Position numbers and translations under genes: made by a program. A DNA stretch of 64,000 nucleotides, taken from the NCBI GenBank assembly GCA_002269645.1, contig NIVC01001818.1:1-64000 (forward strand), given 5' to 3'. The notes under the pieces were generated by a model. The model saw only the letters and a list, made by a program, of their open reading frames with translations. It did no database searches and was not told where the DNA came from. The first letter of the stretch is position 1. Every line of letters begins with the position of its first letter. This document shows positions 11,301 through 12,316 of this stretch, piece after piece. Source of the DNA: Macrostomum lignano (lineage: Eukaryota).

Positions 11301-11889
11301 CTTTTGCAAATAGGTACTTTTATTTATTTATTTCGCCGGCTTGCGTACTTTTTACTAATGTCGGCTAAAAGTTGGCAAAATTTAAAAGTACTGCTTGCTT
11401 GTCATCGACGTGGCAAGAAGTCGAAAGCGTCTGCTCGTTGTGTCTGATCGGATAGTTTTCACAGTCCGTTTTATACTTCTGTAGTTCCATAACAGAACGT
11501 GTCCAAAATTGCATCACAGGCCTGATTGCGTTTTTGATAAATATTACAACAATAGAATCGGGCCCTCCATAAATTTTTGCGAGGTCGTTAGGTTTCAATC
11601 AACAATTTCAGTTGTTAAAAAGGTGTAGAGCTGTTCAAAATTTCCATACCGGATCTCATACGCTTGCTTAGACACACCCCGTTTTCAAATCTTATCACCG
11701 AATTTCAGCCGACCCGAGACATCATTTTTAAGCATCTTGAACCCGCTTAAAGCCATCAAGTACCTGGTCTGCGTCAAGTACAAATGGCTGCTAATCAAGC
11801 TGCTGATTATCACTCTGCTGGCAGCCATTCTTGTCTTGTTCATCTATAGCAGTCCCGGCTATTTGGCCAAGAGGCTGATGGGTGCTTAA
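2305..11889 (+). CDS. OTOF: Otoferlin-like (type II) ferlin, 3' part: linker, last two C2 domains and C-terminal TM anchor; 5' end lies outside the window
   Basis: Phase-consistent GT-AG exons: 2305-2415, 5681-5753, 5883-5991, 6751-7449, 7663-7826, 10014-10386, 10561-10936, 11028-11128, 11709-11889. Ferlin motifs: [88 protein letters not shown], and the TM tail [11 protein letters not shown] typical of otoferlin. Confidence 0.95.
8944..9145. mobile_element. hAT-like MITE (202 bp) in ferlin intron
   Basis: 65-bp TIRs starting CAGGGACTACTCAAACAC with 3 mismatches; perfect 8-bp TSD GTTTGAAT (8936-8943 and 9146-9153). Confidence 0.85.
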
Positions 11890-12138
11890 GTTGAGTGTAA
11901 AAGTACGTGTTCATTTTTAAATCAAATCGTGTTCATTTTTAAATAGATGTCTGCTTGTAGATGTGTAGCAGTTTGTTATCTTACGCATTAAGTCTCTATG
12001 TTTATTTGATATACAGCTTTAACTTTTGTTGCATTTTGTTTGACTATATTACATGCTTACGCTTAGCGTTTGCTCATTGTTGTCATTGTTTTTTCACGTG
12101 TTGTAAGACTGTTTAAACAAAAAATATTATGCTTTCAG

Positions 12139-12316
12139 TCGCCCAGAAACGTCATTTCTAAGCCTACTGAATCCACTGAAAGCGATTCGGCTGCTTTTGT
12201 TTAAGTATCGCTGGATACTTATCAAACTGCTGATTGTGACCCTGCTGACTGCAATAATAGTGCTATTTATCTACTCCAGTCCTGGATACATCGCGAAAAA
12301 GCTCATTGGAGCATGA
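12139..12316 (+). CDS. OTOF: Alternative duplicated terminal exon of the ferlin gene encoding a second TM anchor
   Basis: Acceptor gctttcag|12139 in the same phase 2 as exon 11709. Translates (N)[58 protein letters not shown], 46/60 identical to the first terminal exon by manual alignment. Confidence 0.9.

What the first reader, a model, noticed from the sequence alone, without database searches (positions are those of the whole stretch)
11709..12316. Two duplicated alternative TM-anchor terminal exons in an invertebrate otoferlin, mirroring vertebrate OTOF
Seen: two phase-2 terminal exons, each a complete TM anchor plus stop, about 77% identical in protein but heavily diverged at synonymous sites, which suggests both are under selection. 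Exon A has a juxtamembrane Cys (YLVCVK) absent in exon B. Established: mammalian OTOF also has two alternative last coding exons with tissue-biased use (hair cell versus brain). Inference: either a very ancient arrangement or independent convergent duplication, possibly sorting isoforms to different sensory or secretory membranes.
Basis: partly seen in the sequence, partly recalled or inferred. Interest (0 to 1): 0.75.

Follow-up and report, generated by a model that had tools for sequence, protein, structure and literature searches.

The report
Two alternative membrane anchors, flatworm otoferlin
A flatworm (Macrostomum lignano) otoferlin-like gene ends in two tandem, selectively maintained exons that each encode a complete membrane anchor, as human OTOF does; public annotations list alternative anchors in several other animal phyla, so this is a real but not unique case.

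Summary
After the shared phase-2 donor at 11128, exon A (11709-11889) and exon B (12139-12316) each have a TTTCAG acceptor and encode juxtamembrane segment, 19-residue hydrophobic anchor, 14-residue tail and stop. They are 78% identical in protein and saturated at synonymous sites (pS 0.84, pN 0.16).

The window is Macrostomum lignano. The gene is a type-2, otoferlin-like ferlin. A diverged paralogue on contig C180 carries the same pair (A', B'), with dN/dS about 0.1 for A/A' and B/B'. The duplication is therefore old and both exons are under purifying selection. No poly(A) signal lies between A and B, so the likely mechanism is a choice between two acceptors (or a stop-bearing cassette), as for vertebrate exon 47/48.

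The arrangement is not unique. RefSeq isoforms give alternative anchors in scallops, Lingula, an acorn worm and sea stars. Juxtamembrane sequences fall into two old classes: Trp-His (vertebrate exon 47) and Cys (exon 48). Exon A is Cys class. B and B' also derive from that class, so the flatworm pair is most likely an independent duplication, convergent with vertebrates. Transcript use and function were not tested.

The parts
10561..10936 (+). Constitutive exon, second half of the last C2 domain (C2G): [12 protein letters not shown]...NEKELG. Donor GGG|GTGAGT.
   Evidence: ORF. About 65% identical to solved otoferlin 9qe2. Boundaries from the tblastn contexts and the sequence.
11028..11128 (+). 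Penultimate coding exon ([33 protein letters not shown] + 2 nt). It carries the single phase-2 donor (CAA|GTGAGC) that both anchor exons share.
   Evidence: Homologous exon found in Lingula (L033 69986-70084) and in paralogues g2 and g3.
11129..11708 (+). Intron before exon A, ending in the acceptor TTTCAG (11703-11708).
   Evidence: It has 7 differences in 580 nt between the two copies of the locus, against 0 in the exons.
11709..11889 (+). Exon A: Cys-class tail-anchor exon. It encodes 59 residues plus the shared Asn codon, with stop TAA at 11887-11889. The hydrophobic 19-mer [19 protein letters not shown] has mean Kyte-Doolittle hydropathy 3.10, followed by a 14-residue tail.
   Evidence: The juxtamembrane half is 70% identical to vertebrate exon 48 and 47-50% to Trp-His-class exons.
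11770..11772 (+). TGC codon for the juxtamembrane Cys (YLVCVKY). It lies about 6 residues on the cytosolic side of the hydrophobic core.
   Evidence: The Cys sits at the same alignment column in paralogue exon A', Cichlidogyrus, Lingula, hemichordates, echinoderms and vertebrate exon 48.
11890..12138 (+). Spacer between A and B. It contains no AATAAA or ATTAAA. Weak candidate donors lie just after the stop (TAA|GTTGAG at 11890, AAA|GTACGT at 11903). It ends in the acceptor TTTCAG (12133-12138). It contains a 17-nt direct repeat and an indel relative to the C13 copy.
12139..12316 (+). Exon B: second tail-anchor exon. It encodes 58 residues plus the shared Asn codon, with stop TGA at 12314-12316. 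It has no Cys and is one residue shorter in the juxtamembrane segment. The 19-mer ILIKLLIVTLLTAIIVLFI has mean hydropathy 3.03. GC3 is 0.48, against 0.68 for A.
   Evidence: The orthologous exon B' in the paralogue gives dN/dS about 0.105.
13448..13453 (+). First canonical AATAAA after the gene, and so the likely shared poly(A) signal. This is inferred.

Best explanation
**What it is.** The window holds the 3' part of a Macrostomum lignano type-2 (otoferlin-like) ferlin gene. Its single penultimate donor (11128) can be joined to either of two acceptors 430 nt apart.
- Joining to 11709 gives a protein ending in anchor A. Anchor A has a Cys-class juxtamembrane segment, and its stop comes before B. 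B is then untranslated, or A acts as a stop-bearing cassette.
- Joining to 12139 gives the same protein ending in anchor B.

**How the two anchors compare.** Their hydrophobic cores are equally long and equally hydrophobic, and their 14-residue luminal tails are near-identical. Both should therefore insert as tail anchors. They differ mainly in the roughly 10 cytosolic residues next to the membrane: [10 protein letters not shown] in A against RLLL-FKYRW in B. That is one Cys, which is a possible S-acylation site, and a one-residue register shift.

**Inferred function.** By analogy with mammalian TMD1 and TMD2, the switch would change membrane-proximal geometry or sorting of the Ca2+ sensor, not its ability to insert.

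**History.**
- The pair arose by tandem duplication of a Cys-class anchor exon within the flatworm lineage.
- This happened before the split of paralogues g1 (window) and g2 (contig C180).
- Both copies have been kept by purifying selection.
- The pair is therefore a convergent re-creation of the two-anchor design seen in vertebrates and several other phyla.

**Shown:** exon anatomy, phase, conservation, selection, and class membership of the juxtamembrane half.

**Inferred:** actual splicing of both exons, acceptor choice versus cassette, and the functional consequence.
For: **Anatomy and phase.**

**Organism.** Hit P0002 (M. lignano BOX15_Mlig025810g1) lies on a contig of 174,707 bases, the same length as G000 contig C948. 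Its tail is identical to the translation of that locus.

**Ferlin identity.**
- Pfam finds C2 x5, FerI, FerB, dsrm_Ferlin and Ferlin_C, and no DysF or FerA.
- The best solved structure is otoferlin 9qe2.
- Vertebrate otoferlins score 449-486 bits, against 361 bits for FER1L4.

**Selection.**
- A against B: pS 0.84, pN 0.16.
- A against A': dN/dS 0.11. B against B': 0.105.
- The two copies of the locus show 0 differences across both exons (359 bp), against 7-12 per kb in flanking non-coding DNA.

**The duplication predates the g1/g2 split.**
- A and A' share LVCVKY and GYLAK.
- B and B' share the one-residue deletion and GYIAKK.IGA.
- In the transmembrane-half tree A joins A' (96/72), and B and B' sit apart from them in a different starred clade (98/93*).

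**One 3' end.** There is no poly(A) signal between A and B, or between A' and B'. The first signals lie after B and B'.

**Equal anchors.** Hydropathy is 3.0-3.1 for all four exons.

**Class membership.** The juxtamembrane tree has a starred clade (95/95*) that holds every Cys-class exon and also Macrostomum A, A', B and B'. Holding A, B, A' and B' as one clade is as good as the free tree.

**Mammalian analogy.** Exon 47 (TMD2) is used in brain and exon 48 (TMD1) in cochlea. The two show different localisation in HEK293 cells (PMC10394277, PMC7768390).
Against: - No transcript data could be examined, so use of either acceptor is unproven.
- No database protein carrying tail B was found.
- B has a weaker polypyrimidine tract and lower GC3 (0.48) than A and the constitutive exons. 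This could mean lower use.
- The candidate donors after A's stop are off-consensus for this gene, so the cassette variant of the mechanism is weak.
- With only 59 alignment columns, AU tests cannot reject rival topologies. B+B' placed with the Trp-His class gives p 0.12. All Cys-class exons as one clade without B and B' gives p 0.12 on the full alignment.
- B' keeps a Trp-His motif (LMWHRFKW) like the other class.
- S-acylation of the Cys is pure inference. The library holds no paper on otoferlin palmitoylation.
Confidence: 0.68

Rival explanations
1. Ancient homologous arrangement. The flatworm A/B pair descends from the same ancestral pair as vertebrate exon 48 and exon 47, that is, one Cys-class and one Trp-His-class exon already alternative in the bilaterian ancestor. 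B and B' would be degenerate Trp-His-class exons.
For: - Both classes occur in deuterostomes and spiralians. Ptychodera has a C tail and a W tail, and Lingula has a Cys-class exon followed by a class-I-like exon.
- In the juxtamembrane tree, vertebrate exon 47 groups with the invertebrate Trp-His class and exon 48 with the invertebrate Cys class. Holding exons 47 and 48 as one clade is rejected at p 0.02.
- Lingula has the same order as Macrostomum, with the Cys-class exon first.
- B' keeps LMWHRFKW, and its juxtamembrane half is slightly closer to Haliotis class I (55%) than to Cys-class exons (41-48%).
- AU tests do not reject B+B' with class I (p 0.12).
Against: - B and B' fall inside the Cys-class clade in the juxtamembrane tree (95/95*).
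- B's juxtamembrane half is 76% identical to A's.
- In the full tree the flatworm exons cluster together (82/80).
- WHNYKW also occurs in sea-urchin myoferlin, so Trp-His is an ancestral ferlin state and not a class marker.
- Trp/Cys flips recur: scallops have W and C versions of class I.
- The exon order is opposite to the vertebrate one.
Confidence: 0.2
2. Exon B (or exon A) is a non-functional relic of a tandem duplication. It would sit in the 3' UTR or the intron and never be used as coding sequence.
For: - There is no transcript evidence.
- No database protein carrying tail B was found.
- B has lower GC3 and a weaker polypyrimidine tract.
Against: - The synonymous sites of the two exons are saturated, yet 78% of residues, the reading frame, the phase, the acceptor and the stop are all kept.
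- The orthologous B' in a paralogue that is itself saturated at synonymous sites is intact, with dN/dS about 0.1.
- B matches Pfam Ferlin_C at E 6e-24.
- The only poly(A) signals lie after B and B'.
Confidence: 0.08
3. Assembly or haplotype artefact. The two exons would be allelic or paralogous copies wrongly placed in tandem.
For: The assembly is fragmented (5269 contigs) and holds two or three near-identical copies of many loci.
Against: - The same tandem pair, with the same spacing, is present on both C1818 and C13 (98.8% identical including introns).
- A diverged version of the pair is on C180 and C741.
- A and B are only 66% identical in DNA, far more diverged than the two copies of the locus.
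Confidence: 0.01

Closest known systems
Vertebrate OTOF exons 47 and 48 (TMD2 brain isoform, TMD1 cochlear isoform)
   Same: - Two tandem exons follow one shared penultimate exon. Each encodes the juxtamembrane segment, a tail-anchor helix, a short luminal tail and a stop.
- One member carries a juxtamembrane Cys (..KYL[IV]C..YKW..). Exon A is 70% identical to exon 48 in that half.
- The upstream exon carries its own stop, with no poly(A) signal before the downstream exon. This was seen in Tetraodon.
   Different: - The order is reversed. Vertebrates have the Trp-His exon (47) upstream and the Cys exon (48) downstream. Macrostomum has the Cys exon upstream.
- The second flatworm exon is not Trp-His class by tree, and looks like a lineage-specific copy of the Cys-class exon.
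- Tissue-specific use is documented in mammals and unknown here.
Annotated alternative anchors of otoferlin-like genes in other invertebrates (RefSeq isoforms: Lingula anatina, Mizuhopecten/Argopecten, Ptychodera flava, Asterias, Patiria)
   Same: - These are alternative C-termini of the same length that differ mostly in the juxtamembrane segment, often as a Trp version and a Cys version.
- The Lingula locus shows the same layout and order as Macrostomum. The Cys-class exon (KYLVCVQFKW) is 530 nt after the penultimate exon, and a second anchor exon lies 1.6 kb further on.
   Different: - Those pairs include a true class-I (SIRYILW/C-HNYKW) exon, which Macrostomum lacks.
- Sea stars have four tails.
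- Lingula has poly(A) signals between its two exons, and Macrostomum has none.
- None of these cases is discussed in the papers I could search.
Single-anchor otoferlin-like genes (insects, most molluscs in the sample, Cichlidogyrus, Anneissia)
   Same: They share the Ferlin_C architecture and the same phase-2 boundary before N-R-P-[DE].
   Different: Only one anchor exon was found in the two loci I could read in full, Cichlidogyrus L031 and Anneissia L034.

Membership tests
Ferlin family, type 2 (otoferlin-like, no DysF) | Multiple tandem C2 domains together with FerI and FerB motifs | tested here: met
   Pfam on the exon concatenate built from contig C13 plus the window gives C2 x5 (E 1.6e-70), FerB (1.3e-28), FerI (2.4e-8) and dsrm_Ferlin (3.2e-19).
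Ferlin family, type 2 (otoferlin-like, no DysF) | A single C-terminal transmembrane anchor (Ferlin_C) | tested here: met
   Ferlin_C matches with tail A (7e-29) and with tail B (6e-24). Hydrophobic 19-mers score 3.0-3.1, each followed by 14 residues.
Ferlin family, type 2 (otoferlin-like, no DysF) | Absence of DysF and FerA domains | tested here: inconclusive
   No DysF or FerA hit was found in my concatenate or in the precomputed Pfam list of paralogue P0002. My concatenate omits some small exons, so absence is not proven.
Otoferlin orthology group (as opposed to FER1L4/FER1L6) | Closer to vertebrate OTOF than to other type-2 ferlins | tested here: inconclusive
   - In the C-terminal 337 residues, OTOF scores 449-486 bits and FER1L4 361 bits.
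- The best PDB hit is otoferlin.
- No whole-protein tree was built.
- M. lignano has at least three otoferlin-like paralogues.
OTOF-type alternative tail-anchor exons | Two or more tandem exons after one shared donor, all in the same phase, each encoding a complete anchor plus stop | tested here: met
OTOF-type alternative tail-anchor exons | Both exons used in mature mRNA, with tissue or cell bias | not testable with these tools
   No RNA data were available. The only support is indirect: purifying selection and the position of the poly(A) signal.
OTOF-type alternative tail-anchor exons | The pair consists of one Trp-His-class and one Cys-class juxtamembrane segment, in the vertebrate order (Trp-His first) | tested here: not met
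   - A is Cys class and lies upstream.
- B lacks both Trp and Cys.
- B' has Trp-His but groups with the Cys class in the juxtamembrane tree.
- The vertebrate order was verified in Tetraodon.
OTOF-type alternative tail-anchor exons | The pair is orthologous to the vertebrate exon 47/48 pair | tested here: inconclusive
   The trees favour a flatworm-specific duplication. AU tests on 30-59 columns do not reject the alternative (p 0.12).
Tail-anchored (GET/TRC40-type) membrane proteins | A single hydrophobic helix within about 30 residues of the C-terminus and no signal peptide | tested here: met
   for both tails. Use of the insertion pathway itself cannot be tested here. For mouse otoferlin it is cited in PMC10394277.

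The most novel reading that the evidence does not exclude
Otoferlin has carried a two-anchor switch since the bilaterian ancestor. One version has a Trp-His juxtamembrane segment and the other a Cys one. Lineages that lose one version rebuild the switch by duplicating the remaining exon, as Macrostomum did. Under this reading the W/C (or Cys/no-Cys) juxtamembrane difference is the selected variable. It could be an S-acylation-dependent sorting or tilt switch of the Ca2+ sensor.
Probability: 0.3. Interest if true: 0.7.

Novelty: new member of a known kind. Interest (0 to 1): 0.45.

Why it matters
**Open question in mammals.** OTOF is a deafness gene and a gene-therapy target. It is still unclear why mammals keep two anchors, TMD1 and TMD2. 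[quoted passage not shown]

**What this locus adds.**
- The same design is kept under selection in a flatworm.
- Alternative anchors are also annotated in scallops, a brachiopod, an acorn worm and sea stars.
- Across these phyla the difference is concentrated in about 10 juxtamembrane residues, typically Trp against Cys.
- Taken together, this points to a conserved functional reason for having two anchors.

**A model to test it in.** To my knowledge M. lignano is transparent, regenerating and amenable to transgenesis. Exon-specific knock-outs or reporters there could test the reason directly.

**A caution for annotation.** Homology-chained gene models fuse tandem anchor exons, as seen in P0054, P0445 and P0446.

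Tried and rejected
**Searches that gave nothing useful**
1. A word-indexed homology search scored on exon B alone found only 13 candidates and no hit. That search was wasted.
2. Of 12 encoding-contig look-ups, 7 found no gene on record. One gene, in Glandiceps, was too long to return DNA. I therefore could not get exon order for scallop, Ptychodera, Asterias or Patiria.
3. The representative search with exon B returned no protein with a B-identical tail; the best was 59%. It gives no evidence for or against use of B. It did turn up chained models with 2-3 tandem anchor exons from unnamed sources.

**Analyses that could not decide**
4. The full-length (59-column) exon tree cannot resolve A/A' against B/B' or the class question. 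I split the alignment into a juxtamembrane half and a transmembrane half. The two halves conflict: vertebrate exons 47+48 form one clade at 99/100* in the transmembrane half but are rejected as a clade at p 0.02 in the juxtamembrane half.
5. A search for selector or docking-type inverted repeats around the exons found only short, weak matches. I rejected this as evidence for RNA-structure-guided exclusive splicing.

**Ideas considered and downgraded**
6. I considered Trp-His in B' as proof of class-I ancestry. I rejected it because WHNYKW also occurs in sea-urchin myoferlin.
7. I considered A as a stop-bearing cassette with a donor just after the stop. The candidate donors (GTTGAG, GTACGT) are off the GT[GA]AG consensus of this gene's other introns, so I keep this only as a variant of the acceptor-choice model.

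**A method note**
8. The third homology search used a deliberately padded 3815-residue query. This restricted candidates to proteins longer than 2098 residues and so excluded most vertebrate OTOF entries. The padding was not scored.

Full report
**1. The observation**

- The last shared coding exon is 11028-11128 ([33 protein letters not shown]). It ends CCA CCC AA|GTGAGC, so the intron is phase 2.
- Two acceptors, both TTTCAG, follow at 11703-11708 and 12133-12138.
- Exon A (11709-11889) completes AAC (Asn) and reads [59 protein letters not shown], then TAA.
- Exon B (12139-12316) completes AAT (Asn) and reads [58 protein letters not shown], then TGA.
- Identity is 78% over 58 aligned residues. 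B is one residue shorter.
- Only A has the juxtamembrane Cys (TGC, 11770-11772).
- Each exon has a 19-residue hydrophobic core with mean Kyte-Doolittle hydropathy 3.0-3.1, followed by 14 residues.
- Each tail matches Pfam Ferlin_C.

**2. Organism and gene**

The window is contig C1818 of a 764-Mb assembly in 5269 contigs.
- The best named homologue is a Macrostomum lignano protein (P0002). It lies on a contig of 174,707 bases, exactly the length of contig C948 of this genome. Its tail is identical to the translation of that contig. The organism is therefore the free-living flatworm M. lignano.
- C1818 starts inside the gene. The near-identical copy on contig C13 (98.8% over 3.2 kb including introns) holds the whole gene, about 30 kb.
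- A concatenate of its exons has five C2 domains, FerI, FerB, the ferlin dsRBD-like domain and Ferlin_C. It has no DysF or FerA hit.
- The best solved structure is otoferlin.
- Vertebrate otoferlins outscore FER1L4.

'Invertebrate otoferlin' is a fair name, with one caveat: M. lignano has several otoferlin-like paralogues.

**3. Are both exons maintained?**

Three lines of evidence say yes.

(a) A and B are saturated at synonymous sites (pS 0.84) but differ at only 16% of non-synonymous sites.

(b) A diverged paralogue, g2, has the same pair about 420 nt apart. It lies on C180, with a second copy on C741, and is 80-91% identical in protein in the neighbouring constitutive exons.
- A' reads [59 protein letters not shown].
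- B' reads [58 protein letters not shown].
- A and A' share LVCVKY and GYLAK. B and B' share the one-residue deletion and GYIAKK.IGA.
- In the tree of the transmembrane half, A joins A' (96/72) and B/B' sit elsewhere.
- dN/dS is 0.11 for A/A' and 0.105 for B/B', with synonymous sites again near saturation.
- The duplication therefore predates the g1/g2 split, and each exon type has been under purifying selection since.

(c) The two copies of the g1 locus differ at 7-12 sites per kb in flanking non-coding DNA and carry an indel in the A-B spacer. They show no difference in either exon. Taken alone this is weak, since about 4 differences would be expected.

A relic exon or an assembly artefact is very unlikely.

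**4. Mechanism at the RNA level (inferred)**

- No AATAAA or ATTAAA lies between A and B, or between A' and B'.
- The first signals come after B (13448) and about 60 nt after B'.
- The simplest reading is one transcription unit with one 3' end and a choice between two acceptors for the donor at 11128. Using the A acceptor puts a stop before B.
- A variant is that A is a cassette spliced on to B. GT dinucleotides sit right after the stop in both paralogues (TAA|GTTGAG; TGAA|GTCAGT). They are off the GT[GA]AG consensus of this gene's other donors, so I give this variant less weight.
- No convincing inverted repeats of the docking/selector kind were found.
- No RNA data could be consulted.

**5. 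Comparison with vertebrates, checked on data**

- Reviews state that human and mouse OTOF use exon 47 (stop inside, TMD2, brain) or skip it to use exon 48 (TMD1, cochlea). They also report that the two anchors localise differently in HEK293 cells (PMC7768390, PMC10394277).
- In a Tetraodon locus the upstream anchor exon reads ..KSIRYFIWHNYRW.. and the downstream one ..KAIRYLVCNRYKW...
- RefSeq isoforms of stickleback, medaka, sturgeon, axolotl, Pleurodeles and a gecko carry one or the other.
- The vertebrate order is therefore Trp-His exon first and Cys exon second. This is the opposite of Macrostomum.

**6. The arrangement is widespread**

A padded query kept most vertebrate proteins out of the candidate list. 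With it I collected otoferlin-like proteins from many phyla and then listed their cluster members. Alternative tails of the same length are annotated in several groups.
- Scallops: KSIRYILCHNYKW and KSIRYILWNNYKW.
- Lingula: KSLKYLVCVQFKW and KSIRYILCNTYKW.
- Ptychodera: KAFKYMICVRFKW and KSIRYILWRNYRW.
- Asterias has four tails and Patiria three.
- Salamanders and paddlefish have a third tail.
- The listed members for insects, a crab, Haliotis, oysters, Mytilus and Mya showed one tail, of the Trp-His type.

In the Lingula locus the Cys-class exon comes first (L033 70617-70796) and the second exon lies 1.6 kb downstream (72375-72554). This is the same order as in Macrostomum.

The only two other invertebrate loci I could read, Cichlidogyrus and Anneissia, have one anchor exon, of the Cys class.

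I found no paper in the searchable library that discusses alternative anchors outside vertebrates, and none on Macrostomum otoferlin.

**7. Ancient or convergent?**

- With all 59 columns, the tree groups exons by lineage. Vertebrate 47+48 join at 94/99. The Macrostomum exons join Cichlidogyrus at 82/80, inside a starred clade with neodermatan flatworms and echinoderm Cys exons. AU tests reject nothing.
- Splitting the alignment exposes conflicting signal.
  - In the juxtamembrane half, a starred clade (95/95*) contains every Cys-class exon: vertebrate 48, the hemichordates, the echinoderms, Lingula exon 1, Cichlidogyrus, and Macrostomum A and A'. It also contains Macrostomum B and B'.
  - In the same half, vertebrate exon 47 groups with Ptychodera's W tail and the protostome Trp-His exons. 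Holding vertebrate 47+48 together is rejected (p-AU 0.02).
  - In the transmembrane half, vertebrate 47+48 are one clade at 99/100*.
- My reading has two parts.
  - The two juxtamembrane classes are old, probably bilaterian. The membrane-spanning halves have been homogenised within lineages, by gene conversion between neighbouring exons or by shared lineage-specific constraint.
  - Macrostomum A is a member of the old Cys class; its juxtamembrane half is 70% identical to exon 48 and 50% to exon 47. B and B' are best explained as copies of that same class made within the flatworm lineage. A, B, A' and B' held as one clade fits as well as the free tree.
- The flatworm pair is thus convergent with the vertebrate pair, although it is built from an ancient exon type.
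- The alternative is that B/B' are degenerate Trp-His exons. It is disfavoured but not excluded (delta lnL 23, p 0.12).
- Caveats:
  - I named the classes after seeing the alignment.
  - The partitions have only 29-30 columns.
  - The bootstrap had not settled.

**8. What the switch may do (inference)**

- The cores and luminal tails of A and B are equivalent, so insertion as a tail anchor should not differ.
- The difference is confined to the cytosolic residues next to the membrane: a Cys about 6 residues before the core, and a one-residue deletion that shifts the register between the last C2 domain and the helix.
- Across phyla the same column flips between Trp and Cys, and in scallops it does so within a single exon class.
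- The Cys could be an S-acylation site. This is a plausible but untested idea, and I found no literature on otoferlin palmitoylation.
- By analogy with mammalian TMD1 and TMD2, the likely outcome is different sorting or membrane-proximal geometry of the Ca2+ sensor.

**9. Verdict**

The feature is real and under selection. It is a new flatworm member of a known kind, the alternative tail-anchor exons of otoferlin. The wider pattern it led to may interest ferlin specialists more than the single locus: two old juxtamembrane classes and repeated exon duplication across animals. That pattern rests on short alignments and on database annotations, not on transcripts I could inspect.

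Noticed in passing
window 18490-21409 (+): Two long ORFs that form a leucine-rich-repeat gene (Pfam LRR_8 at 4e-19, LRR_4). There is a hydrophobic stretch near the C-terminal third. It is unrelated to the ferlin gene.
   Followed up: partly
window 28630-63755: A dense series of minisatellite arrays. Examples are a 9-mer x126 at 42072-43202, a 29-mer x45 at 46769-48056 and a 23-mer x63 at 61018-62484. They explain the GC-skew jumps in the composition profile.
   Followed up: partly
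G000 C948:55114-55293 (L009), with copies on C889 and C723: A third M. lignano otoferlin-like paralogue (it encodes P0002) has only one anchor exon within 3 kb either side. Its juxtamembrane half is myoferlin-like: RPETSFNFLLSP is identical to sea-urchin myoferlin, and it groups there at 98/90*. Its transmembrane half groups with exon A/A' (98/93*). This is a chimeric signal that I cannot explain.
   Followed up: partly
window 11906-11944: A 17-nt direct repeat (CGTGTTCATTTTTAAAT x2) lies in the A-B spacer. An indel relative to the C13 copy sits at about 11931. The spacer is variable while both exons are invariant.
   Followed up: partly
L032 (Tetraodon) 34342-34523: The exon-47-type anchor exon of Tetraodon OTOF can be read only across two frame shifts in this draft assembly. 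This is either sequencing error or a decaying exon.
   Followed up: no
proteins P0391, P0392, P0420, P0388, P0519: Salamander and paddlefish OTOF have a third annotated C-terminal anchor (..LIWRHYRW.. ending in GR) besides the exon-47 and exon-48 types.
   Followed up: no
proteins P0054, P0445, P0446, P0447, P0488: Database gene models read straight through two or three tandem anchor exons. These are annotation artefacts, but they reveal further tandem duplications. One is in a jellyfish-like sequence and one in percomorph fish, where both exons are Cys type.
   Followed up: partly
G000 C13, upstream of the gene (outside the window; g13 coordinates 15245-21587 and 31766-36264): About 6 kb of a short tandem repeat that reads as open 'LSIYLS' frames in all three phases, followed by a cluster of C2H2 zinc-finger ORFs.
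   Followed up: no
window 887-1537 (+): A long low-complexity Ser/Pro/Ala/Gly-rich open frame inside the ferlin gene with no Pfam hit. It may be a disordered linker exon or partly intron. Its exon boundaries were not determined.
   Followed up: no
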